A DNA stretch of 64,000 nucleotides. Source: Lytechinus pictus. Lineage: Eukaryota. Positions 25,269-41,629 of this stretch are shown here, piece by piece. Position 1 is the stretch's first letter. Every line of letters starts with the position of its first letter. The position numbers and the translations under genes are program-made. The notes below the pieces were generated by a model that saw nothing but the letters and a program-made list of their open reading frames with translations, did not search any database and was not told the DNA's origin. The stretch is from positions 1,798,001 to 1,862,000 of the forward strand of contig NC_087245.1 of assembly GCF_037042905.1 (NCBI RefSeq). The letters are read 5' to 3'.

Positions 25269-25950
25269 TAAGTGTATATTAAGAAAAGGAAATTTCTTTT
25301 TAACTAATTAGGTTCTTGAATAGAAACATACTATTTACATCTGTATTATATTGGAATTGAGATACCTTCGTTATCTGCCTTGCGGAGATATCCTTATTTC
25401 CAACCCCCATTTTACAATTCAAATAAATTCTATCATTTCGCAAGCTGCTAACTGCATCCTTGCTATGCTACACTTGGTTGCAAAGTTTCTCTTAAAATAT
25501 CACTCTACTTTACCTTTGCTTCCTAACCATGCTTCCATCATATATCTAAATAATAAGAGTTGCTAATAGCTAGAGGTTGAGACAATCTATACATTTATTG
25601 CCGAGGCTCAGACATTTCAAGAATAGAAGCAATTCAAAAAAGAGCAAACTGCTTCTATTTTTCTCACGATGCGCTCGGCATAAATGCATTTTAAAGTTTT
25701 CACCTCAATTTTAGGGGCCGGACGAAAATAGCCCCTAGAGCACGAGGCAATAGAAGGCAGAAATCAATATGGAAACCGTGCATTAAAACTAGTGACATGA
25801 TTCCCTTTGGGTACAGAAAAAATATCTAGACTTGTTACCAGACCAACCTTGGTTAAAATCTTTAATAACAGACATGAAAAATTGAAATTGAATTGAATTG
25901 AAATTGAAAATAAAGGAGAGCTATGATCTGGGGCCTATTTCATAAAGGTA

Positions 25951-26175
25951 CAGCGTCAGCGTCAAGTCCCAAAACAGCGTCAAATCTTCACTTGCAGCGT
26001 CAAATTTAATATTTGACGCTGCAGCGCATTTCATAAAGAGTTGACGCTCCAGTAGGAGCGTCAACTCTTTACTGGAGCGTCAAGTATGGTTACTGGAGCG
26101 TCAAATAGGGTTAAATATCTGACGCTGGTCATGGGGGAGCGTCAAGTTGACATTGTAAGGGTTTTTCAACGTCAA
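25951..26175. repeat. Left subterminal motif array (11 x AGCGTCA, both orientations, with hairpins)
   Basis: Copies at about 25952, 25958, 25976, 25996, 26015(rc), 26042(rc), 26057, 26076, 26097, 26120(rc), 26138; 17-bp stem taaagagttgacgctcc/ggagcgtcaactcttta at 26034-26071. Confidence 0.9.
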
Positions 26176-26189
26176 GTTCATTGTTCAGA

Positions 26190-29100
26190 ATGGCGTACGT
26201 TGTGCTGTTGCACGCACAAAGAGCTCTGAGGAGAGACAGAATTTTTAGGGATCGTACTCAGCCTTTGGAGATATACGACGACACTGATATGCTCAAGAAA
26301 TATCGTTTCAACCGACAAGGAGTTATTTTTTTAATAGATTTTCTGCGAGAAGAACTAGCTCATCCGACAAATAGGAATCACGCTATTCCACCAACCTTAC
26401 AAGTATTCATTGCACTGAGGTTTTACGCTACTGGCTCAGTCCTTGACAATAGTGCTGTGCACCATGGTGTAAGCATATCAACGGCTTGCAGGATAGTAAG
26501 AGCTGTCAGCTGTGCACTCTCCAATCGGAAAAATGAGGTAATTAATTACTTAGTTAATGTTAGGCTTCGGTTTGCATTTTAAAATGACTCAACTCCTCTC
26601 ATAATCTCAGACTAAAATCTGCATACATTTGATTAAGTGGGGCTGGCTTCAGGGCTTGGGATGGTTTTAACCAAGTTTAAACTCTGCTTCTGCTTACATT
26701 ATTACCTCGTTCGTAGGATGAGTGCTTCTGGCTAGATTCACAGCAACTGACTCATTTGGTATTTATTAATGGTAAAGGTTTTTGAAAATCCAAAATTCAA
26801 TAAAAATAAAAATAAATCACTCTGACAATTCACATTTCCAGCTATACGATATCCTGGGCCTTGGGTGTATATGAAGACCCATTTTACCCAGGGAGCTCCG
26901 GCCCGCGAAGCAGTGGCACAGTGCGTAACTCCCTGGCCTGGGATAATCTATCTAGTCTGTATTTACGCCGGTAATGACGGCTTGATCTATTCTAGAATCT
27001 AGGCCTTTTCAAAGTCGAGCCTTGAACCTACCCATAATCCATATCAAATCATTCAATAAAAAAAAAAGTCATGACAAATGTACCGTATTTACAGTTAACT
27101 TAAATGTCGACGAGTTTATAGGCGGCCATAGGCATAAATTCACTCGTTGACGGTTGAGCTCGATCGCTGCAACTTGTTCCTAATCCTAGTCCCACACGTA
27201 ACAAATGCTGTAGCCATCCTGGGGCAAAGTCTGCAATTCCTTTTCAATGTTGTTCCAGGGGCCACCAAGCCTCGCCAATCCTTGTAAGTCACATAAATAA
27301 TCAGAACAATATTGAAAAAGCTGCATCCAAAAGCCTTAAGTAGATTTACTTACAACTTTTTGGTAAAGAACTTGGCTTAGTCTAGCTGAACTCTAACTTA
27401 CTCTCTAGTCTAAACGTTAACTCTACCGGCGGCTGGCCCACTAGTGAAATGAGATGGCGCTTGTGACTTGCTTGTGTACGATCAACAACCTGATAAATGA
27501 AGGAGTCTTTTTTTTTGTAATGCGAAGCCGTGATTTGGGGGGGGGGTGAGGCATATCAAGCCCCCGATGGTATGGTATAGATACAAAACGAATGACAATA
27601 TTTGTTATGTTTTGTCGGTAGGAAAAGTCAATTGCCTGATACAGGGGTGGGTTGCATGCCGGGGTTGCATGCATGCATAATTTTCCAGGGGGGGGGGGAT
27701 TTTCCCCGAAGAAAATATGACAAGCAGAACAAGAAAAAAAAATAATGAATAAGATTATCACCCCAAAATTGAAGGTCATTTCCTCCACGCAAAATTTTGG
27801 AAAAAAAAGTTCTCACTCATGTAGGAAGGGCAGCATATCCCATGAAAATATGCTGTGACTTTCAAAGGAGGGGGTGGCGAATTTATATTATAATCATGGC
27901 TCTTAAATGGATAAGTGCAATGTTTGATAAATTTCAGGGGCGGATCCAGCTTTCGCCATGAGGGGGGCCGACAAATATTTTCATCAACATTTTTCTCGAT
28001 TGGCCGCTATAATCTGATTTTTTGTTGTTGGTTTTTTCAGGGGGTAGTCCTAACAAAAGGCTGAAGTTTTAAGTATGTTAGTTTTTATTGTTATAAACAA
28101 GATAAGGTATATCATGTGGTCTTGATATATAATGCGAGCACGAAGCGCGAGCTAGAATTCTTTGATATTTTATGGCCTTATATAGGACTGAAGATTCTGA
28201 GCATTTTTTATAATCATGAACAAAGATAAGTATCCAACTAAAAAATGCGAGCGCAAAGTGCGAGTCGAAATTTTATTAGAGTTACGTGAAAAGGGACTCA
28301 ATTAGGACTGTTTTAGTGATTAATGAAGAGGATACAAGTATCACCAATTAAATAATGAGAGTGCGAAGCGCGAGCTCAAAATTTTTGATATTCCGACCTG
28401 AAAACTGGACAGTCTAAGCGCGTTTTAATTTGAATAAAGAACAAGCTGTTGTCCCTAACAGTTAAATGCGAGCGCGATGCACGAGGTTAATTTTTTGATA
28501 TACTGACATGATAAAGGAGCATTTTGACAAATTTTGGAAAGAATTTCCAAAGAGGATAGGTATCTCACAAATCAAACAATGCGATCGCGCAGCGCGAGCT
28601 GAAAATTTTGATATAACAATTTGTGTAAATCGAACAAAATAATTGAAGCTTGATGTGCGAGCTAAAATATTGTGTGCGAATTTTATTTCAGAACTGGATA
28701 TATTAAGAGTCATTTAATCCTCTTGATTCATTACACGGGCAATGCGAGCGCGAAAATTTTTATTATAGGTCTATTTTCCAATTCTTCCCCTCACCTTTTT
28801 CTTGTTTCCTTTCGGGATCGGGCCGGCCGTTACGAGTCTGTAAATGACACATCATGGGTATAATACCTTTCTTACTTTTCTTTCTGTTTTTCGTATCAAG
28901 TTAAAGAGTACACTTTTTTCTGCAGTATTTGAGTATGATCCAATATACGTGGATTCTAATCAATACATTTTGATACTTGAAAATAAGGGGGGGGGGACTG
29001 AATGTGCCCCTGGATCCGCCATTGGCCTGATATATTTTACAAATGAATGATGCCAAATAAGGTATATTACTAAATTCCTATCAATTTGGAACAAGCTGGT

Positions 29101-32100
29101 AATGGGGGAGAAATATAAGGAGCCTTTACTAACTTTTTTTTAAAGGAGCGTAAAATAAGTGTTGTACTCGATCTTCAGCATTTCTTACAGTTTAATTGCC
29201 AGATTTGTGCATTTACTCTCGGTGAAATGATTAAAAAATTTTAAATAATCATTATTCTTATTTATTTTATTTTTATTTCATTTATTTATTTATTTATTTA
29301 TTTATTTATTCATTCATTTTTTTTATTTTTTTTTATTTTTTATTTTTTATTGCTGCTATTTAGAGTCGATTATGCTCATGATTCTGCTGTCAAATTATCA
29401 TATGTTGAATAAATACTCACTGTCAATAGGCAAATGCATTACAAATACTCAATATATATTCCTAACGTTTCTTTGTCGGGAGGAAAAATCCATTATTTAA
29501 ATGAATACTTGGAATATGAAGGCCACAATTATACCTTTGTTATATATCATGCTAAATCTTTGGCTGATATTTCGATCATTTTCTCTTGAATGACCAAACA
29601 AATACCCCAGAAATAAATATCCCATTCTGGCATCTGTCCAAATATAAATATTCATGAATAATATGCATTATTTCATTGCTAACAAGTTCTAAGTTTAATA
29701 TGTAAATATATAGCTTGTATATTTAATAACATGATTAATATTGATCTCCATGTGCTATATTAATTTCTTTATTCTAATTTAAATGAAAACATTGCCATTG
29801 CCGGTCTTATACCCATCTTTTTCACATCCCCAAACACTTTCACTGTGGGATCCGATGATAGAAACTAACACACAAACTATTTCTAATCAATGTTTTCAAA
29901 GGCTTAGAGGAGTGATGTCATTTCTGTAAGATTCTTGCATTTATTTCTCATTTTGTTGAACTGATTTTAAATCAGTTTCAGAAAAAGATCCCCTACTTTA
30001 TTCTAAATTCTATTTGAAAAATATAAAAAAAGAATCTTACGAAACCCGGCTTACTCATATTTCCAAATTCTTCCCTATTATATATTGAAAGAACTCAAAG
30101 ATTTTCTTTTAACCATCAGCTATCATCAGTCTGCAATAGACAATGGAATTTAAAGTACATAAAAATATGCATATTTAAAATATTTCATAGGTCAATAATT
30201 TAATTTATTTAAATGCAATTTTATACACTTTACAATATTTACATCACATGTAGTAATACTTATATTAATTTATCAATAAGTAATAACTTTGCATTAGATA
30301 TATTAAGCATTTGATTACACGTTGATACCAAATATACAAAGAATTGGTCAAAAATATTCATAACAAAATGATTTTTAGAGTATGATGGAATGTTGCATTT
30401 TCTAACATGGCAAATAAAATACCAGTAAGTGTAATTTTCAAGATATTTCGAGAAGAATGTTCCGCAATTATTGACTACAGTGGCACTTATAATATTGTCA
30501 TCATCTCTAAATTATCATTTCTTACTGCAGTTCATCACATTCCCCACAACACCGCACAAAATAAGGGAACAACAGAATAAGTTCTACCACATTGCACAGT
30601 TTCCAAAGGTGATTGGTGCGATTGACGGAACTCACATCTATCTACATGGAGCACCATTGGGACAGGATGAGTACCTGTACACCAACAGGAAAGGGCGGTA
30701 CTCAATAAACGTCCAGCTTATCTGCGATGCAGATTTCCGAATAATCAACGTGGTAGCTAGATGGCCCGGGAGTACGCATGACTCCAGAATTCTCCAGGTA
30801 ATATACAACAGATTATTTTATTTGCTTTTGCATAGTTAATTCGTCAAATATTTAATATTTTGTATCAATATATACCATTCTAGAATTTGACGTTTAACCT
30901 GTTGACAGATAATGGAGCAAAAAAACTGCCAAACTTCTATTTTTAGGATTTTGATGAAATTCAAATTCAAATTTTACTTTACAAAAAAGAAAAAGTAGAA
31001 TGGCAAGCTAGTAAATGAATTGCACGTATATCTCCCAATTTCTTCATGAACTTAACTTTTTTGAGTTGTTGAAAGTTAAGTCATCATTACTTTTTTAGCA
31101 TCGATATCTTTGTGTTTATTCATTTGTTTTACTATTTGCAGCACCCCTTGACACACATGAAATCAATTATTGTGGTTTAATTTTTACAGAACAGTGTAGT
31201 TGGACAGAACTATGCCAATGGACGTTTGCATGGCATTCTCCTTGGAGATTCAGGCTATGCCCTGCACCCTTGGCTTATGACTCCTATCCTGAACCCCCAA
31301 AATCAAGCACAGAGAGCGTACAACCAGTAAGTAGTATTCATATTTCTTAAAGTTTGGAACACACATTCTATCTTCATCCCCCTTGAGCTGGTTGGCTGAT
31401 GACTTATACACTGTGAAAAACAAATCAGTGTTACATGTTTATCATCAACAATGTACTTTACATCTAGATAAAGACGACCACTGAAAAACACTTCAAATAT
31501 CAATCCTTTTCTTTTTTGTTAGTGGACATTCACAAATACCATAAAATCTATCATAAGAATGAGACACTTGATATGAAACAGGTAGGGAGTTACTTTTTCC
31601 AACAGTGTGAAAAGCAATATTCAATAACAACATTCTATGCATTGTACAATTAGAAATGTGTCCACTGTCCACACCATGAAAAGAAGAAAACAAGTGGTCC
31701 TAACATTTTTTAAATCTAATAACCATCATATATATATTTATGTATATTTCAATGTTTTTGCATTTCTTATAAAGATATCATTTCTCAACATTTTATTTTA
31801 AATATTGTTTCTTTCATGTTTGACCCTACATGTAGTTCTCCCGGGGGAGGGGGGGGCCATAATGCCCCACCCTGACAATTTTCGCGATTTATCTGCTGCG
31901 CAAAATTTTAATTTCTTAATCTTCATGAATTTTACAGATCTCACTGCCGCACAAGAGCGCTCATTGAGCAAGTTAATGGGCAATTAAAGAACAAATTTAG
32001 GTGCTTAATTGGACAAGGACTCCAAATGCGGCCTGACAGAGCCTCCAACGTCATCTTGGCCTGTGCTGTGCTGCATAATATCAGCAAACAACTTCGGCAG

Positions 32101-32211
32101 CCTGAAGTTCTCTTCGACGTGGAAGCAAATGATGACATAGTTGAGCAAGTAGATCACGCCCCCAATGGTGTAGAAGCACGGAATGTTATCATTGAAAATC
32201 ACTTTTCATAG
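26190..32211 (+). CDS. Harbinger DDE transposase (HARBI1-like), 341 aa; exons 26190-26537, 30531-30797, 31190-31326, 31938-32211
   Basis: All three introns are GT-AG (phases 0, 0, 2) and join into one 1026-nt ORF. N-terminal KYRF..LQVFIALRFYATG HTH region; catalytic motifs IGAIDGTH, RWPGSTHDSRI, LLGDSGY and HCRTRALIEQVNGQLKNKFRCL; also ACAVLHN. Confidence 0.95.
27935..29024. mobile_element. Inverted copy of the 3164-4243 element nested in transposase intron 1
   Basis: Starts caggggcggatccagctttcgcc, the reverse complement of 4221-4243; collinear inverted similarity over ~1 kb; ends ctggatccgccattg; no clean TSD. Confidence 0.8.
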
Positions 32212-32271
32212 TATAATATTGTTTTTGGTGTAGTTGCTGGCAAAATTATGAACATTCTGATATCAATTATT

Positions 32272-34088
32272 ACAAACTATCAATCTAGTGTCTTTTCAAA
32301 TTGGACAATTTTATGTATGTCCAAGGGTTGTATGCTGTTATACAAAAAAGAAACAAACTATCAACCTAGTGTCATTTCAAATTGGACAGTATATCCAATG
32401 GTTGAATGTTATTTTACAAAAAGAAACAAACTATCAACCTAGTGTCATTTCAAATTGGACAGTATGTCCAAGGGTTGTATGCTGTTATACAAAAAAGATA
32501 CAAACTATCAACCTAGTGTCTTTTCAAATTGGACAGTATATCCAATGGTTGAATGTTATTTTACAAAAAGAAACAAACTATCAACCTAGTGTCTTTTCAA
32601 ATTGGACAGTATATCCAATGGTTGAATGTTATTTTACAAAAAGAAACAAACTATCAACCTAGTGTCATTTCAAATTGGACAGTATGTCCAAGAGTTGTAT
32701 GATGTTATACAAAAAAGATACAAACTATCAACCTAGTGTCTTTTCAAATTGGACAGTATATCCAATGGTTGAATGTTATTTTACAAAAAGAAACAAACTA
32801 TCAACCTAGTGTCTTTTCAAATTGGACAATTTTATGTATGTCCAAGGGTTGTATGCTGTTATACAAAAAAGATACAAACTATCAACCTAGTGTCTTTTCA
32901 AATTGGACAGTATATCCAATGGTTGAATGTTATTTTACAAAAAGAAACAAACTATCAACCTAGTGTCTTTTCAAATTGGACAGTATATCCAATGGTTGAA
33001 TGTTATTTTACAAAAAGAAACAAACTATCAACCTAGTGTCATTTCAAATTGGACAGTATGTCCAAGAGTTGTATGATGTTATACAAAAAAGATACAAACT
33101 ATCAACCTAGTGTCTTTTCAAATTGGACAGTATATCCAATGGTTGAATGTTATTTTACAAAAAGAAACAAACTATCAACCTAGTGTCATTTCAAATTGGA
33201 CAATTTTATGTATGTCCAAGGGTTGTATGCTGTTATACAAAAAAGATACAAACTATCAACCTAGTGTCTTTTCAAATTGGACAGTATATCCAATGGTTGA
33301 ATGTTATTTTACAAAAAGAAACAAACTATCAATCTAGTGTCTTTTCAAATTGGACAGTATATCCAATGGTTGAATGTTATTTTACAAAAAGAAACAAACT
33401 ATCAACCTAGTGTCATTTCAAATTGGACAGTATTTCCAAGAGTTGTATGATGTTATACAAAAAAGAAACAAACTATCAACCTAGTGTCTTTTCAAATTGG
33501 ACAATTTTATGTATGTCCAAGGGTTGTATGCTGTTATACAAAAAAGATACAAACTATCAACCTAGTGTCTTTTCAAATTGGACAGTATATCCAATGGTTG
33601 AATGTTATTTTACAAAAAGAAACAAACTATCAACCTAGTGTCATTTCAAATTGGACAATTTTATGTATGTCCAAGGGTTGTATGCTGTTATACAAAAAAG
33701 ATACAAACTATCAACCTAGTGTCTTTTCAAATTGGACAGTATATCCAATGGTTGAATGTTATTTTACAAAAAGAAACAAACTATCAACCTAGTGTCTTTT
33801 CAAATTGGACAGTATATCCAATGGTTGAATGTTATTTTACAAAAAGAAACAAACTATCAACCTAGTGTCATTTCAAATTGGACAGTATGTCCAAGAGTTG
33901 TATGATGTTATACAAAAAAGATACAAACTATCAACCTAGTGTCTTTTCAAATTGGACAGTATATCCAATGGTTGAATGTTATTTTACAAAAAGAAACAAA
34001 CTATCAACCTAGTGTCTTTTCAAATTGGACAATTTTATGTATGTCCAAGGGTTGTATGCTGTTATACAAAAAAGATACAAACTATCAA
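32272..34088. repeat. Tandem array of 24 units (73/74/81 bp) with three unit types and a 374-bp higher-order period
   Basis: Constant part ACAAACTATCAACCTAGTGTC(T/A)TTTCAAATTGGACA...TACAAAAA(A)GA(A/T). Variable part A gtatatccaatggttgaatgttattt, B attttatgtatgtccaagggttgtatgctgtta, C gtatgtccaag(a/g)gttgtatg(a/c)tgtta. Order BACAACABAACABAACBABAACAB. Confidence 0.95.
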
Positions 34089-34434
34089 ATCGGGTATTAA
34101 GACAGCTTTAAGGGCCTCAAATGTTTTTTTTTTAATTTATATATCATTACTTATGCCTTTACTGGTCTTGAAGTGTTTGAAGGATATTCACATATGTTGG
34201 AATCTTTCTTTTTACATCGAAAAATATTTGCCACATTTGATACACAATGGTATTCCCTTGGTAAAGAAAAGAATATTCATTAAAATACATGTATAAAGAG
34301 GTCTGAATTATAATTCTATAACTATAAAACCATGGTAACAATATATAGTGTGTCAATATAAAGGTCAGCTAGATCATCTGTGTTTTGTAATCTCTTTACA
34401 TCATCATTACCATAAACAAAATTAATTTGACCAT

Positions 34435-37400
34435 TTAATGTAGCTTATCCCTAATCTCCTTCAAGACCATGAGGATCCCCTGCAAGGCCTCCACCTTTTG
34501 GTCCTCCTTCTCTAAAAACCTTTCGTGGAAAGATATAAGAGATGCCTGGTGAGAAGTTCGGGGGAATGTTTCTGCTGGCTGCTCTCCTCCTGTGGCTCCT
34601 GTATTTCAAAATTGATAACAAAATGAATAATGATTAAGAATCAATGAAGCATATGAAATTGGTGAAGATTCATGACAGTTAAATTTCATGGAAAAGTGGG
34701 ATCAAATATAAATTTTCATATAAAATAAGAGAAATATAATAAAGAATATTTCATCATGAACATTTTGCAGACTACCTCACTTCCTACCATCTACAAATTG
34801 TCAGTGCAATCGGGTAATCCCAGTCAAGTTCTAAAAGCTCACCCCCCCCCCCCCTTTCATGGAGGATGTTCAGAGGAAATAGCTGGGCACTATAAGGGAT
34901 AAAATTTTAAATTGTATAGAAAACGTTTTGCATTGTAAATGAATGAATGAATGAATGAATGAATAATGAATGAATGAATGAATGAATGTTAGAAGGAGTG
35001 AATGAATCTGGGAGTGATGGGATGAATGATGGAATGAATGTATTGGAATAACGAATGCATGTATGAATGATTGAAATCTAATGTGATTTTCATTTATTTT
35101 TTTCATTTCAAAATGAATAAATTTGTGTAAAGACTATCAAACACAATATTCTGTCTTCCCATTTGTTATGTACTTTTTATAACAAAAAATAAGAAAAAGT
35201 TAGAAATGATGAATCTTTAAAAGTACTAAATGATCATAAATAAATATGAGTTAACTTGATGGTGGAAAGTGGTAAATGCTCAGAGGCATGAGCCCATCTT
35301 TAAATTTCAAAGACCAAGAGATACAGATGAGGTTAGAATAAAAATAAGAGAGAAAATCTATCAACCATAATAATAATGATAATAATATAGGGTATTTATA
35401 TTGCGCACATATCCACCTTGTTATAGGTGCTCAAGGCGCACCTATGTAACATGCAACATGTTGAGTCAACTATTATTTCTTTTACCACTGGCAAATAATT
35501 GAAATTGTAAAAGTTAATTCTATAGATTTCCTTTTGTTAATTGATTCATCAGGACCACACCAGACAGATCTCTTTCTTACCTTGTGGTATTTCTTCCCCT
35601 TGAACGATTTCCTCCTCCTCCTCCATCATATTCATAAGGAGTGCTGCTGCAGCGTCATTCTGACTTTCAGTCTGTAATTGAAAAATGAGATATAATACAT
35701 GAATAAAAGTTCAGTAATAACTTACAGAGAATATAGCATACCAAATATCTCCCAGAGAATATACCACCTCAAGTATGTCCCAGAATAGATCTCTCTTCAT
35801 TCCTCTTCCATCTACTAGATCCCTTCATTCATCATTTTCCTCTAAATCAACCTACATTTTACCTCCTTTGCATGAAGACCCAATATAGTGATCACATGTT
35901 TGCTGTAATTGCTCGTGCCCTCTGGAAAAATCTCCCAATTCAAACCATATCCAAAATGTTTCTTCCATAGAAATATCAAAATCCTTACTTATTACCTCAT
36001 CTTATTATTATAATTACTATCGTAACATATAACATAAATAAGCATTTAATCTTTCCTTTCTCAGTTCAAGAGCACTTTAAAAACCTGCCTTTTTAATATT
36101 ATATATATATGCTATATTCTTATTTAGATCAAGTGCATAATTAAGTATTAAATACTATGCGCTTAATAAATCTAACATTATCATTATCATAATAAATTAT
36201 GAACATAAAAAATTACCAATGGCAAGTCAGCCTCCACAGAGGTCTCTCCCTCCAGCCCACAAAAACCATCAAGGGCCTGTGGCGCCAGTGCCGCCAGTAC
36301 TTCTTCATACTTCTTGTTATATTTCACTGGTCCACCTCCTGAAAAAAAAATTAAAAAAATAAGTTTGAATTATTGATTCCAATAAAACCTCTATTTCTTT
36401 TCCTCTGGGTTTTCTTGTTTATGGTTAAGTGCATATTATAATTTTTGTTCCGAGAGCAATGACTTATTAATGAAAACATGAACAACATTTATAATTAACA
36501 TGGATCGCATATTACATTTTAAAGAATTGCTTTATTCATCAAAGCATGCACAACATAAGCAATGTGCGGGTGGGAGAACCAACGCTATAATTCACTCACT
36601 ATTTCTTATATTTATAGTATTAATCCCTAGAACCAAATGAATTATTCTCTCAGTGCAGTATGTTTCCAGATTTATTGTTTGTTTTATCCGAAAAGAATTT
36701 AACATAACAATAGTAGTTACATTTATATAGCGCTTATTATACTTTGTTTCTAAGCGCTTTACATTGCAATTATTATTACCCCGGTCATCGGATCCTGACG
36801 TGCCTGCACACAATGTATGCACTTTCTCCACTCCCTGGGGAGCATTCCAACAAGAGTTCCAAGACTAAATTGCTAGGCATACTACATAGGATTTTGCATC
36901 TTAACGGGTACCCATTTAAAACCTGGGTGGAAAGTGGCAAAGTGTGGATTAACGCTTTGCCAAGGGACGCTTGGCCGTGGTGGGAACACACGACCCTCTG
37001 ATCGCAAGGCGAGAGTCAGAATCGCTACACCATGATGATTCCACGATAAACCATAATATAAATAAAATTAAAATGAGCATGTGATATCATTTATTTAAGT
37101 TGTATGTCTTCTACGTCCAAATTTACAAACAAATAAAGGTAAACAAATTTTCATCCAATTAGCATGAATTTATCGTAATTTTTCAGTGGTTACAATTTTG
37201 ATATTGTTAGGATGAACTTGACATTGAACAAAAGAAGCCAAATTATGTTGTAATACCTGTTGCCATCCTTTGCAACCTATACTTTTTAGCTTTGCTGGAC
37301 CAGCTATTCCAGCTGGTCCTCAGATCCTTCCAGGACCTCCCTTTCGGGAGGCCCTGGGCCTCCATCTCCTGGAGAAGCTGGTTCCAGGTCCGCTCCTTCC

Positions 37401-38099
37401 TCTGCTGGACCTAATACATAATAATAAACGAGAAAACATGAAACCGATTACCAAAACCAACATGTAATATAATCGTAAATAAATCCTTTATTATGGTTCC
37501 TCTTATGTCCAAGTTTCATGAACTAGATCTATAAAATTTCAAAGTTATGATGACAATTCCACAAATACCCACATGGCCAAAGTTCGTTGACCCTATAAAG
37601 TGACCTTTGATCTTGGTCATGTGACCTGAAACTCAAGTAGGATCTTAAGTAATACACTACTACCCTTATGTCTAAGTTTCATGAACTAGGTCCATAAACT
37701 TTCAAAGTTATGATGACATTTCAAAAGAAAAACCTTGATTAAGATTTTGATATTGATTCCCCCAACATGGTCTAAGTTCATAGACCCTTAATGACCTTTG
37801 ACCTTGGTCATGTGACCTGAAACTCAGGCAGGATGTTCAGTAATACTTGATTACCCGTATGTCCATGTTCCTAAATGAGGGAGATTTGGGAGCAGTAACC
37901 ATTTCTGTTCTTGTTGGCTTGTCATTTTTTAAAGTTTATTCTCAGGGCCTTGAAAAAAAAATGTAGGCGAAATTAAACATACCCTCACACTGCAATGCCC
38001 TGCCTTTCCAAATAATGGCTCTCGATGCGCCCTAACAAACTCTGCCATGTGGTGGACCTGCTCTTCAGACAGGTTGCCCTGCCTGTTTTCTTGATTCAT
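34435..38099 (-). CDS. Myb/SANT-like (trihelix) DNA-binding protein of the Harbinger element, 215 aa; exons 38099-37983, 37410-37257, 36338-36217, 35671-35581, 34598-34435
   Basis: Four GT-AG introns (phases 0, 1, 0, 1) give a 648-nt ORF: MNQENRQGNLSEEQVHHMAEFVRAHREPLFGKAGHCSVRVQQRKERTWNQLLQEMEAQGLPKGRSWKDLRTSWNSWSSKAKKYRLQRMATGGGP, then an acidic linker and a C-terminal helix KVEALQGILMVLKEIRDKLH*. The Trp spacing and TGGG motif are typical of Harbinger ORF2/NAIF1/MSANTD proteins. Confidence 0.9.
34938..35070. repeat. (TGAA)n microsatellite in the last intron of the Myb-like gene
   Basis: Direct reading. Confidence 0.85.
36712..37045 (-). mobile_element. Near full-length tRNA-derived SINE in a Myb-like gene intron
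   Basis: Minus strand: tggtgtagcgattctgac (A box), partly deleted B box, body shared with the 17441 and 6513 copies, tail aagcgctatataaatgtaact. Confidence 0.75.
37500..37870. repeat. Two ~165-190-bp tandem units with TGACCTTTGA(C/T)CTTGGTCATGTGACCTGAAACTC motifs (interspersed repeat remnant)
   Basis: aagtttcatgaactag..tttcaaagttatgatgaca occurs at ~37511 and ~37674; the tgacctttga motif at 37601 and 37792. Confidence 0.7.
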
Positions 38100-40429
38100 C
38101 TGAAAGAAGTGTCAATTTCTCTTTAAATTTAACTTTTTCCCAATTAAAGTGATACAGACAGTTTCTTTCTTTCTTGTTTATAAATTACTTCTTAAACCAC
38201 TCTTGAGAAAGTAAATACTTTGGGAAGGCATTTCATTGATATGAAATGTGAATTTTTCCAACATTTTGGCAAATATACTAGGGAAGGACTTTTCTCACAC
38301 TTTTTTCCAGATATAACTTTTGCCATTTTCTTCTTATTTTTTTTTACAGTGGTTAAACCATTTATACCCCTTCCCATTGAATATGCCTGATTAAAAAATA
38401 TGTTTCTACTGAAAATAAAATAATACAAACTAAAGGATATAAAAATAGAAATGTGCCATTCCCAGAAGGTAAGTGAAAATTATTTGCTTGGCTTTTAATT
38501 ATATTCCAGTCAGAATAGACTGTTGCCACAGCTGTTAACAAATATTCGTAATGGCTTCTTAATTTTCCCCTTTTCCCCATGTTTATATTAATTTTGTTTT
38601 ATTCATTTTTCTTTCACTTTCTTTTCTTTTTTCCCTGTTCTTTGTTTTTTCTTTCTTTTGTTTTATTTCACTTATTTCTTTTCTTTTCTTTTTCTTTTTG
38701 TAATATACTTTTTGAAAATTATTTTCATTTGTTTCCCCCTTTTATGCATTGTTCTAATTTTGCAGAATATTTTTCTGTGATTTTCTCCTGCTATAATATA
38801 CTGCAAAAGGGAAAACAGAAATAAAATGGATTTGGGGCCTGCATAATCTAGGTTTTAGGATTCAAAGAGGAAGAAATGAAAAACCATAGTTTTGTACATC
38901 TATCTGTGTTTGCTATGCACTATTTATTTACTTTACCATTATGAGTGTGTGTGTCTATACAGAGATTTAAAAAAAAGTCCACACAACCTGGGAACAATAA
39001 AATTCATTTATTCTCTTTCAATCATTTCATTTTTACAATGATAGAAACAATTTATATTTTACCACAAGCCAATTAGCAAAGTAAAATAACAGCAAACAAG
39101 GTTTACATACAAGATGATAAAGTGGAAGTAACTTAGTGGTAGTGGCTGCAGAATTAATATTTCAGAAGTTTGTTTTATCAATTTTTAATGTGTTTCTTTA
39201 TATTTTTCGGGCCACCAAACTTTAATATCGGGCCACCAAAAAAAATTATTTGATGGTTTTGGTGGCCCGAACAAGCCACCACCAAAAACAGTTAATGTGG
39301 AGCCTTGATTACTAAGATATTACCAAAAAAATTTATGAACAGAGATTATAACATAGGACTATGTTAAATATTCCTTTCTGATTTCAAAGTATACAGTACA
39401 AGAGGCCTACATGCACAGGGTTCTGATTGTTCACTGAGACCACAAAACTAAGTAAATGAAGTATGCAGGCAATTGAGAAAAAGGGTATGTGTTCGCTGGA
39501 GTCTGTTATCCTAGTTTATAATTTCACAAACGGTCAGTAGTACGAGCAATTTGAGAATTTTGAGAATTTTAAAATTTTCTGGTAACTTTTTTGGTGGCTG
39601 CAGTTTCTGAATCCAGGGGCGGTATTCTGAACATTGTCTTTTCTCCATATTTTATCTTATCTCGGAGACAAAATTGGTATTCTGGTGGATGTCATAACTT
39701 TTGTCACAAAAATTGTCACAAATTTTGTCTCTTCTCTTTAGCGGGCACCAAAAATATGTGGCTTTAAATGGTAAAAAACTCCTCGAAACATATGGCTGCC
39801 AGCTGTCTAGGTTTTAACTAGATCGAAAGCTTCAGCCTCTATTATATTGGTTGTTCCGCTGAACTCAGCTCCGTTGGCTCCACGTACATCCATGTACCGG
39901 TACTCAGGAGTTTTTAACATTTTCAACATTTTTTTAATTTCTCCATTGTTAATGGAGAAATAAAAAATAAAAATAAAAAAATGTTTTAAAAACTCCTCAA
40001 AACTGATGGCTTGCCAGCTGTCTAGGTTTTAACAAAAAATTAAGGATATTTCGCCCTCGAAAAAATAAGCAAGCAAAAAAAAAAAAAAAAAAAACTTCAC
40101 TTTCAATTTTTTTTAATTTTACTTCTCCGGGGACAGGGGCACAGGCCGGCTGTGCCCCCCCCCCCCCCCGGATCCGCCAGTGCTTTCTTCCTAAACTTCT
40201 GACTTGAATTGAAATTTTAATTGTTTGATAAAATGATGGAAAGAAAAAAAAATCATAACATTGCATGTTAATGAATATGATAATGGTGAAATCCGGTTTT
40301 CAACTTCAACTTGCCACAGCACAGGCATAAACAAGGATTAGCTAACTTAATATAATTAGGTCTAGTACTAGTAGGCCTATAATATGGCACTTATCTAACA
40401 TTATATAAAAATTATTAAGATCTCCGCTA

Positions 40430-40960
40430 AGTGAGCAGGTAATTAACCGTAACCGTAAGGACACGGCTGCTTCACCGGAGCATCGGCCACCGGCGCGGCG
40501 CATCGGCCAGAGCCGCAACTCCGGGGTACTACACCGGTGCGGTATCGCCGTACAGTGCATGCGAAGGAACGCTCAACGAAGAAGCTACTGTCTGTGGGCT
40601 TGGCTAGCTACGCAGAATTCAAGTATTTTCCTTTACGAGTAAATATGGTAACAAAAGTCATTTCAAACCACCATTTCAATGAACCACGTGAATTAATTCG
40701 AACAAATTAATTATTAACGATTATGTCTTACTTTGCTGGAATTCTCCTTCGGCTTCGCGAGCGATCTTAAAGTTGAATCATCGAATTGAGTCTAACGTTA
40801 GTGGTGTTGTTACCGTGGGATCTAACTAGCTGACGTCACGTTTGTTTGTAAACAAAATTTGTTGGGTATTCCTCTGCGCGCCATGTGTGTCGCGCTCGCT
40901 CAGCTGATCGGCTGATTCAATCCGGATCGATCGGAGGCGGACACTGCCGCCGATTCGGGT
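40430..40960 (-). promoter_or_regulatory. CpG-rich putative promoter and non-coding first exon of the Myb-like gene
   Basis: GC/CpG-rich island just inside the right TIR; TGACGTCA at 40832; candidate minus-strand donor AAA|GTAAGA at 40731. The ATG at 38099 directly follows an acceptor (tttcag|ATG), which points to an upstream exon. Confidence 0.5.
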
Positions 40961-41023
40961 CACGTTGTAAAAAAAGTGGAGAGGAAGGGGATTTCCCCCT
41001 AATCAGCCTCGTACATGACTATT

Positions 41024-41190
41024 CAAATAATTCGCTGGAAAGTCAAATAATTCGCTGGAAAGTCAAGCTGACTTTCCAGCGAATGTGCTTTTATGAAATG
41101 CAAAGTTGCTATCATAGCAAGTTGCTAGCATAGCAAGTAAAAGTTGCTATCATAGCAAGTTGCTATGATAGCAACTTGCTATGATAGCAA
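41024..41190. repeat. Right subterminal motif array: five 15-bp palindromes TTGCTAT(C/G)ATAGCAA plus three copies of TTCGCTGGAAAGTCA
   Basis: Palindromes at 41106, 41122 (variant), 41144, 41160, 41176; ttcgctggaaagtca at 41031, 41051 and inverted at ~41069-41083. Confidence 0.9.
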
Positions 41191-41629
41191 CTCTTTATGA
41201 AATAGGCCCCTGGACATCAGTTTGGCAAATTCTTATTAATTTGTTTAATCAGTTGATTTTTTTTCATCAAGTCAGTATTTCATTGTAATTTGATTTTTTT
41301 TCCAGTCTCCCTTCTCGATTTTTCTTGTTATTTGTTATTCTTTTTTCTTTGCTTTCTTCTTCTTCTTCAATGCCTTCCTTTCATGAAGATATTGCACGAT
41401 AATGCTCGAACATATAGCTTGAATCCATTAGGTAAAATACACCCTTCACTTTCGTATTAGTTTTCATGGAAATTTGACAGGTCCCTCGTCTAGAAATATA
41501 TTTCGTAAAAAATGAAAGAAAAAAGACACAAAAGTATCTTTCACTTTGCACATCTGACACTATCATGCTTAATGACAAATGTGATAAAACTAATAGAAAT
41601 TTTGACCATGATTTCTTTTTAACAGTCGA

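What the first reader, a model, noticed from the sequence alone, without database searches (positions are those of the whole stretch)
32272..34088. Structured constant-plus-variable array with higher-order grammar between the two convergent transposon genes
Seen: 24 units begin 60 bp after the transposase stop and end ~350 bp before the Myb stop. Each has ~47-48 bp of constant sequence plus one of three variable segments (A 73, B 81, C 74 bp units), in the order BACAACABAACABAACBABAACAB. The block ABAAC (374 bp) recurs, matching the ORF offsets 32736/33110/33484. Copies are nearly identical, which suggests recent expansion or homogenisation. Inference: I see no AATAAA/ATTAAA on the + strand between the stop (32211) and 34279, so the array is probably transcribed as the transposase 3' UTR. 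It could be a regulatory RNA module, a small-RNA source, a protein-binding array or a nascent satellite carried by the transposon. I know of no such array as a standard Harbinger component.
Basis: partly seen in the sequence, partly recalled or inferred. Interest (0 to 1): 0.75.

Follow-up and report, generated by a model that had tools for sequence, protein, structure and literature searches.

The report
Minisatellite inside a Harbinger transposon
The array is a real 24-unit tandem repeat sitting between the two genes of a 15-kb Harbinger jumping gene, but it behaves like an ordinary, fast-changing minisatellite carried along by the transposon rather than a coded "grammar".

Summary

The "constant plus variable" reading does not hold. 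The three unit types are subfamilies of one monomer: A and C are 64/74 identical, and B is C plus a 7-bp insertion.

The host is a complete PIF/Harbinger element at 25931-41209. It has TIR GGGCCTATTTCATAAAG, a CTG target duplication, a DDE_Tnp_4 transposase and a Myb_DNA-bind_5 gene.

- The genome holds exactly 33 monomers: 24 here and 9 in the only other full-length copy, on another chromosome, in a different order.
- More than 120 short non-autonomous derivatives share the element's ends but lack the array, so it is not needed in cis for transposition.
- DNA of a related species also holds the monomers.
- RNA-derived contigs reach the array from both sides. One is an unspliced RNA running out of the transposase region. 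The other is the spliced Myb mRNA. Strand and true ends are not resolved.
- The monomer has no relatives elsewhere, no convincing RNA structure and no known RNA family.

Best reading: a passively co-transcribed internal minisatellite evolving by unequal exchange. Earlier notes of this scan cover only this same window.

The parts
32272..34088 (.). Tandem array: 24 units (13 A of 73 bp, 6 B of 81 bp, 5 C of 74 bp) plus a 12-bp partial unit. The higher-order block AACAB / ABAAC is 374 bp.
25931..41209 (.). Host element: a complete two-gene PIF/Harbinger transposon. The TIR is GGGCCTATTTCATAAAG at both ends. The 3-bp target duplication CTG lies at 25928-25930 and 41210-41212.
   Evidence: The second copy is G000:C3:77960253-77973974, 97-99% identical.
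30435..32211 (+). 3' part of the transposase gene. Exons lie at about 30435-30810, 31190-31330 (LLGDSGY motif) and 31935-32211, with the stop TAG at 32209-32211.
   Evidence: Pfam DDE_Tnp_4, E 3.6e-11 and 5.9e-9.
34077..38111 (-). Myb/SANT-like second gene. Its last exon and 3' UTR (34077-34597) reach the array edge. Spliced exons lie at 35580-35671 and further upstream.
   Evidence: Pfam Myb_DNA-bind_5, E 2.8e-6. Spliced RNA contig, record 10, with coordinates mapped.
32212..32271 (+). 60-bp unique spacer between the transposase stop and the first unit. It is crossed by the RNA contig record 8.
34131..34136 (-). The only minus-strand ATTAAA between the Myb stop region and the array. There is none inside the array.
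34279..34284 (+). First plus-strand ATTAAA after the transposase stop. It lies inside the Myb 3' UTR, so the 3' ends of the two genes would overlap if it is used.
41103..41190 (.). Right subterminal 16-bp palindromic repeats (AAGTTGCTATCATAGC, about 5 copies). These are candidate Myb-protein sites and are unrelated to the array monomer.
26055..26113 (.). Left subterminal 21-bp repeats (GGAGCGTCAAAT...), with further AGCGTCA copies at 25950-26005.

Best explanation
The array is a transposon-borne minisatellite. One ~73-bp monomer was duplicated in the non-coding spacer between the convergent transposase and Myb-like genes of a CWG-targeting Harbinger element. It diverged into three subfamilies (A, C, and B = C + 7 bp) before the two surviving full-length copies separated. 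Since then it has changed in unit number and order at each locus by unequal exchange or replication slippage. In the window copy a five-unit, 374-bp block was amplified recently, taking the array to 24 units against 9 in the other copy. The array has no poly(A) signal on either strand and lies between two convergent genes. It is therefore co-transcribed passively when the element is expressed, as a long 3' UTR or read-through. It is not needed in cis for transposition. Shown here: the anatomy, the copy-number difference, restriction to the two copies, absence from the mobilised derivatives, and presence in RNA contigs. Inferred: the exchange mechanism, neutrality, and passive transcription.
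For: - Anatomy and higher-order structure.
- Units are subfamilies of one monomer.
- The second full-length copy on C3 has the array at the same place with 9 units in the order B A C A B C A B C. It shares the edge unit carrying the T variant and the commonest A unit letter for letter. The window-specific C variant (GAG..GATG) occurs only in the amplified part.
- A genome-wide pattern search with up to 3 mismatches finds exactly 33 monomers, 24 + 9, and 0 with the reversed control.
- Array units of the two copies differ by about 1-2 letters per unit. Flanking non-coding DNA differs by 1-2.6%, so there is no extra constraint.
- More than 120 candidate non-autonomous derivatives share the first 239 bp (96%) and the 3' end, have CWG duplications, and hold no monomer.
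- None of 28 other Harbinger transposase loci in this genome has a comparable array within 1.5 kb downstream.
- No poly(A) hexamer inside the array on either strand.
- RNA contigs of run X5 carry the window copy's letters and reach the array from both sides. The Myb introns are uncovered, so the run is RNA.
- DNA contigs of a related species (X14) cover the array bins at depth 149-729 against 60-115 in the flanks. One contig runs from the transposase 3' end 22 nt into the first unit.
- Internal tandem repeats that vary in number are documented in other DNA transposons, such as Tetris and Galileo: PMC4079207.
Against: - The array has been kept in both full-length copies and in a related species, which could also reflect selection.
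- Each unit carries short inverted repeats (TTGGAC..GTCCAA and GGTTGA..TCAACC). Folding is slightly better than shuffles (z -1.8 to -2.5).
- The monomer shares the hexamer CTATCA with the right subterminal palindrome, a post-hoc and non-significant match.
- Neutrality cannot be proven from two copies.
- The strand, ends and level of array transcripts were not resolved.
Confidence: 0.7

Rival explanations
1. Convergent-transcription overlap module. Neither gene has a poly(A) signal before or inside the array, so sense and antisense transcripts overlap there and form double-stranded RNA. This feeds small-RNA silencing, either self-limitation of the element or host targeting.
For: - The first + strand ATTAAA (34279) lies inside the Myb 3' UTR, and minus-strand signals lie only at 34131 and 34434.
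- In run X5, RNA contigs approach the array from both sides at similar depth (17.2 and 19.9), and the array bins are covered.
- The RNA over the transposase region is unspliced, as expected for an antisense read-through of the Myb gene.
Against: - The strand of the contigs is unknown, and no small-RNA data were available.
- Two ribo-depleted raw-read runs show reads on the Myb 3' UTR but none in the array.
- An overlap of 3' ends does not need a tandem array.
- The other copy manages with 9 units, and other Harbinger families in the genome with none.
Confidence: 0.12
2. Protein-binding array. The units are extra binding sites for the element's Myb-like protein or transposase, like the secondary THAP sites in the Galileo repeats. 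They would act as an internal enhancer or a sink for transposition proteins.
For: - Each unit has two short inverted repeats.
- Each unit carries CTATCA, which is also part of the right subterminal palindrome GCTATCATAGC.
- The Myb-like ORF1 protein of Harbinger3_DR is known to bind element ends (PMC2836001).
Against: - There is no significant similarity between the monomer and the terminal 300 bp or any other part of the element.
- The hexamer match is post hoc, with roughly 30% chance.
- More than 120 derivatives that were mobilised lack the array.
- Unit number differs 24 against 9 between the copies.
Confidence: 0.07
3. Seed of a new satellite DNA. The array would be the first stage of a TE-derived satellite that is spreading in the genome.
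For: The tandem, higher-order organisation with near-identical blocks is satellite-like. There is precedent in Tetris (PMC4079207).
Against: All 33 monomers in the 812-Mb assembly lie within the two element copies, and there is no free-standing array.
Confidence: 0.06
4. Assembly artefact. The array would be an expansion or mis-join produced by the assembler.
For: No long DNA reads could be laid on the window's array. The reads tool refuses stretches with more than 12 copies.
Against: - The same array with unique flanks occurs at a second locus.
- RNA contigs of an independent study cross both array edges with the window copy's letters.
- A related species' DNA holds the monomers.
- At 1.8 kb the array is far shorter than modern long reads (inference).
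Confidence: 0.03

Closest known systems
Internal tandem repeats of DNA transposons that vary in copy number (Tetris TIR-220 in Drosophila virilis; Galileo) - PMC4079207
   Same: A tandem array is carried inside a cut-and-paste transposon. Unit number varies between copies and is attributed to unequal crossing-over.
   Different: In Tetris and Galileo the repeats sit inside the long TIRs. In Galileo they hold transposase-binding sites, and in Tetris they also form free kilobase satellite arrays. Here the array is central, between the two genes. It shows no similarity to the ends and has no free-standing arrays.
Higher-order repeat (HOR) organisation of satellite DNA, such as alpha satellite
   Same: Monomer subfamilies are 86-99% alike and arranged in a recurring multimer (374 bp) whose copies are 99-100% identical. 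The edge units are less homogenised.
   Different: The scale differs: 33 monomers in the genome against thousands to millions. There is no evidence of a chromosomal role.
CWG-targeting animal PIF/Harbinger elements (Harbinger3_DR type)
   Same: The host element has a DDE_Tnp_4 transposase, a Myb/SANT-like second gene, short TIRs, a 3-bp CWG duplication and abundant non-autonomous derivatives. That CWG targeting is typical of this type is from my own knowledge; the scan note s1-324891 also speaks of CWG-targeting Harbingers.
   Different: The element is 15.3 kb with intron-rich genes and carries a 0.7-1.8-kb minisatellite in the intergenic spacer. I found no description of such an array in the Harbinger papers searched.

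Membership tests
PIF/Harbinger transposon (host element) | DDE transposase of the DDE_Tnp_4 type | tested here: met
   Pfam PF13359 on exons 30435-30836 (E 3.6e-11) and 31912-32208 (E 5.9e-9). LLGDSGY motif in the middle exon.
PIF/Harbinger transposon (host element) | Second gene with a Myb/SANT-like DNA-binding domain | tested here: met
   Pfam PF13873 Myb_DNA-bind_5 on 37246-37410 (-), E 2.8e-6.
PIF/Harbinger transposon (host element) | Terminal inverted repeats and a 3-bp target-site duplication | tested here: met
   TIR GGGCCTATTTCATAAAG at both ends. CTG/CTG here, and CAG or CTG in three non-autonomous copies. The C3 copy has CAG/CGG, one change.
Minisatellite / tandem repeat with higher-order structure | Head-to-tail copies of one monomer, with subfamilies arranged in a recurring multimer | tested here: met
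Satellite DNA | Long arrays and high genomic copy number outside a single host element | tested here: not met
   Exactly 33 monomers genome-wide, all within two element copies.
TE-derived satellite seed (Tetris-like) | The same repeats also form free-standing arrays | tested here: not met
Transposase/Myb binding-site repeats (Galileo-like, Harbinger subterminal repeats) | Repeats share the binding motif of the element ends and are kept in mobilised derivatives | tested here: not met
   No similarity to the termini. Absent from >120 derivatives. Actual protein binding is not testable here.
Known structured RNA family or miRNA cluster | Match to an Rfam covariance model at its gathering score, or a stable conserved hairpin | tested here: not met
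   The only matches are MIR394 at 23 bits against a gathering score of 60, E 0.13-0.19. Stems are 5-7 bp, with z -0.8 to -2.5. The variants give no compensatory change.
Transposase 3' UTR element | Present in the mature, spliced, polyadenylated sense transposase mRNA | tested here: inconclusive
   An RNA contig crosses from the stop codon into the array but is unspliced and of unknown strand. Raw-read RNA runs give zero depth in the array.

The most novel reading that the evidence does not exclude
The array is a selected overlap zone without poly(A) signals between the convergent transposase and Myb-like genes. Transcripts of both strands meet there and give double-stranded RNA and unit-phased small RNAs that tune or silence the element. 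Array length would then set the dose.
Probability: 0.1. Interest if true: 0.6.

Novelty: new member of a known kind. Interest (0 to 1): 0.2.

Why it matters
As it stands, this is a clear, well-bounded example of a minisatellite born inside a DNA transposon. It is caught with two copies that show how fast unit number and higher-order structure change (9 against 24 units at 1-2% flank divergence). That makes it useful as a marker for telling the two copies apart and for population typing, and as one more data point on how tandem repeats arise in transposons. It would matter more only if the array proved to be the place where the element's two convergent transcripts overlap and feed small-RNA control.

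Tried and rejected
As the tool suggested, I laid the reads on the second copy, which has 9 units. The window's own 24-unit array was therefore never checked with reads.
- I looked for the origin of the monomer by short-word BLAST against the window with the array masked, 28 non-autonomous copies and 28 other Harbinger loci. Only chance matches of 10-16 bp turned up.
- I looked for comparable arrays downstream of other Harbinger transposases in this genome and found none. The 27/45-bp repeats in L052-L056 are CAG/CAA-rich and look coding. The 52-bp array in L069 lies upstream of the matched exon.
- The Rfam scan gave only sub-threshold MIR394 matches, which are repeated because the DNA is repeated.
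- RNA folding of units, a dimer and a 374-bp block on both strands gave only small hairpins and modest z-scores. The sister note that each unit folds into a nested hairpin is therefore only weakly supported. A C>T change in the C3 units and a G>A change in the A units each weaken the stem on one strand, with no compensation.
- Three literature searches for tandem arrays in Harbinger elements found nothing specific.
- I did not use the large protein searches, because the claim does not rest on them.
- The N runs at 8530-9184 and 9290-10191 were left untouched.

Full report
**Observation.** Tandem Repeats Finder reports a single array at 32272-34031 with nested periods of 73, 220 and 374 bp and scores of 2525-2758. 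Cutting the sequence at the invariant start ACAAACTATCAA gives 24 complete units and a final 12-bp partial unit ending at 34088.

The array begins 60 bp after the transposase stop codon (TAG, 32209-32211). It ends 347 bp before the stop of the minus-strand Myb-like reading frame. A+B+A+A+C is 374 bp, and adjacent 374-bp blocks are 98.9-99.5% identical.

**What the units are.** The "constant plus variable" description overstates the difference between units.
- A and C align over their whole length with 64 of 74 identical positions. The supposedly variable 3' parts alone score 20 against a shuffle mean of -2.2 (sd 3.0), and none of 2000 shuffles reaches 20.
- B is C with a 7-bp insertion (ATTTTAT) after GGACA.
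- Fifteen distinct unit sequences exist in the two genomic arrays. The commonest A unit occurs 11 times here and twice in the other copy, letter for letter.

This is one monomer with three subfamilies in a higher-order repeat, the usual product of unequal exchange. The ORFs of 87-124 aa inside the array are mechanical. The 73-, 74- and 374-bp periods are not multiples of three, and the same peptide reappears in all frames.

**The host element.** The array lies in a complete Harbinger element.
- A second copy on another chromosome (G000:C3:77960253-77973974) is collinear with window 25930-41215 at 97-99% identity.
- Both copies end in the inverted repeat GGGCCTATTTCATAAAG. The window copy is flanked by CTG on both sides (25928-30, 41210-12).
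- Three short relatives show CAG or CTG duplications.
- Pfam finds DDE_Tnp_4 on two plus-strand exons and Myb_DNA-bind_5 on a minus-strand exon. The middle transposase exon carries LLGDSGY.
- The ends carry different subterminal repeats: 21-bp AGCGTCA-type units on the left and a 16-bp palindromic GCTATCATAGC type on the right.
- The first 239 bp and the 3' end are shared at about 96% with a family of 1.3-1.6-kb non-autonomous elements. The first look found 123 candidates.
- A search with the last transposase exon found only the two copies of this family. All other Harbinger transposases in the genome are 68% identical or less.

**Distribution of the array.**
- A DNA search with one 374-bp block found only the window and the C3 locus.
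- A 30-bp pattern with up to three mismatches found exactly 33 sites, 24 + 9, and none with the reversed control.
- The monomer is therefore neither a dispersed satellite nor part of the mobilised short derivatives.
- The C3 array lies at the same place, with 60 bp of the same spacer before it and the same sequence after it. It has 9 units in the order B A C A B C A B C.
- Both arrays start with a B unit carrying the same T variant (CAATCTAG).
- The window's amplified section uses a C variant (GAG..GATG) that C3 lacks. C3 has its own C variant (CCTCGTG, GGATAG). The three subfamilies thus predate the split of the two copies, and each array has since been remodelled.
- Array units differ between copies by about one to two letters per unit. 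This is the same order as the 1-2.6% divergence of the flanking non-coding DNA, while exons are 99.3-100% identical. I see no sign of extra constraint on the array.
- None of 28 other Harbinger transposase loci of this genome has a comparable array within 1.5 kb downstream.

**Origin.** Short-word BLAST of dimerised units found only chance matches. The targets were the rest of the window, the non-autonomous copies and the other Harbinger loci. No TIR or duplication around the array suggests a nested insertion. The simplest origin is local duplication of a spacer segment.

**Transcription.** The public-run search listed eight runs of the same organism whose assemblies are small, about 80-160 million letters. 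They hold 61-82% of the sampled words of 30400-35000. It also listed three raw-read RNA runs and DNA runs of a second organism holding about 20%.

I therefore laid four runs on the C3 copy (L012:2300-7900), whose flanks are nearly identical. Coordinates were mapped back to the window.
- **Run X5, Myb side.** One contig is spliced: window 34077-34597, joined to 35580-35671, joined to a further upstream exon. The Myb introns are otherwise almost uncovered. The run is therefore RNA, and the Myb-like gene is expressed and spliced. Its last exon extends to the first base of the array's terminal partial unit.
- **Run X5, transposase side.** A second contig of 1740 nt runs without interruption from 30576 to 32314. 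It passes through both transposase introns, across the stop codon and 42 nt into the array, at depth 17 against 20 for the Myb contig.
- **Which copy is expressed.** Both contigs carry the window copy's letters at the places where the two copies differ (L012 4197/4198, 4645, 4970). The expressed copy is therefore the one in this window.
- **Array coverage in X5.** The array bins are covered at depth 16-42.
- **What contigs cannot show.** They do not give the strand, so two readings remain. One is unspliced sense transposase RNA. The other is read-through of the Myb transcript across the array and antisense through the transposase gene.
- **Raw-read runs X21 and X22.** About 6% of each ribo-depleted run was sampled. 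The element is almost silent. Depth is about 1-1.5 on the Myb 3' UTR, with the first mate on the + strand as expected for a minus-strand RNA. Depth in the array is zero.
- **Poly(A) signals.** The + strand has no AATAAA or ATTAAA from 32211 to 34279. The minus strand has ATTAAA only at 34131 and 34434 and none in the array. If 34279 is used, the two 3' UTRs overlap.

**Related species.** DNA contigs of organism B (X14) match the transposase exons, the Myb last exon and introns at about 95% identity.
- One contig runs from the transposase 3' end 22 nt into the first unit. This is below the tool's 31-nt bridging rule.
- The array bins have depth 149-729 against 60-115 in the flanks.
- One contig shows a form shorter by 75 nt, about one unit.

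The array is therefore not private to this assembly or species. Earlier notes of this scan name the genome as the sea urchin Lytechinus pictus. I did not test that.

**Structure.** Each unit has two short inverted repeats, TTGGAC..GTCCAA and GGTTGA..TCAACC; the second spans the unit boundary.
- Single units fold with z-scores of -0.8 to -2.1.
- A dimer folds with z -2.2.
- A 374-bp block folds with z -2.5 on the + strand and -1.8 on the - strand.
- The subfamily differences weaken the first stem on one strand or the other, with no compensating change.
- Rfam gives only MIR394 at 23 bits against a gathering score of 60.

There is no case for a structured RNA.

**Interpretation.** The evidence fits a transposon-borne minisatellite. 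It is old enough to be shared by both full copies and a related species, and it evolves by unequal exchange. It is dispensable in cis for transposition, because the abundant derivatives with the same ends lack it. It is transcribed only because it lies between two convergent genes without a poly(A) signal.

Internal tandem repeats with variable copy number are documented for other DNA transposons. In Galileo they add transposase-binding sites, and in Tetris they seeded a satellite (PMC4079207). In Harbinger elements the Myb-like protein binds the ends (PMC2836001). Here the array shares neither location nor sequence with the ends and has no free arrays, so it is not a member of either of those special cases.

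I found no description of such an array in Harbinger papers. That is a statement about the library searched, not proof of novelty.

**Rivals.** The most interesting reading not excluded is that the array is the overlap zone of the two convergent transcripts and a source of double-stranded RNA. The similar depth on both sides, the unspliced RNA over the transposase gene and the placing of the poly(A) signals allow it. Nothing requires it, and the raw-read runs give no array reads. The protein-binding, satellite-seed and assembly-artefact readings are each contradicted by at least one test above.

**Verdict.** This is a real feature, correctly described in its anatomy and over-interpreted in its "grammar". 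It is a new member of a known kind, of modest interest.

Noticed in passing
window 25931-26170 and 40050-41209; loci L018-L043: More than 120 non-autonomous elements of 1.3-1.6 kb share the first 239 bp (96%) and the 3' end of this Harbinger and have CWG target duplications. Only two autonomous copies exist. The family has therefore been mobilised mainly as short derivatives.
   Followed up: partly
window 38155-39307 vs G000:C3:77971990-77972060: Just upstream of the Myb-like gene's first matched exon the two copies are unrelated: 1154 bp in the window against 71 bp in C3. It is a replacement rather than a clean insertion. It may change the Myb promoter of one copy, and the window copy is the one seen in RNA.
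   Followed up: partly
G000:C3:77963843-77964442 (L011/L012); the empty site is window 29501: The C3 copy carries a 600-bp nested insertion with inverted ends (GGACAAGTCCACC ... GGTGGACTTGACC) at a TTTAAA site. The window copy lacks it.
   Followed up: no
window 30576-32314: RNA contig of run X5 that is unspliced across both transposase introns, while the neighbouring Myb-like gene is cleanly spliced in the same run. It could be antisense read-through of the Myb transcript or intron-retaining transposase RNA.
   Followed up: partly
window about 31850-31900, 35206-35579 and 36701 onwards (L012 3796-3982, 6040-6413, 7536-7900): Short stretches inside the element's introns have very high depth in all RNA and DNA runs, with many loose ends. 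They are pieces of other, abundant and transcribed repeat families.
   Followed up: no
G000:C5:46618956-46619400 and G000:C18:6881772-6882213 (L016, L017): Two loci match element positions 66-698 at only 82-83% identity and have no transposase nearby. They are remnants of an older sister family.
   Followed up: no
window 8530-9184 and 9290-10191: Two runs of N (655 and 902 bases).
   Followed up: no
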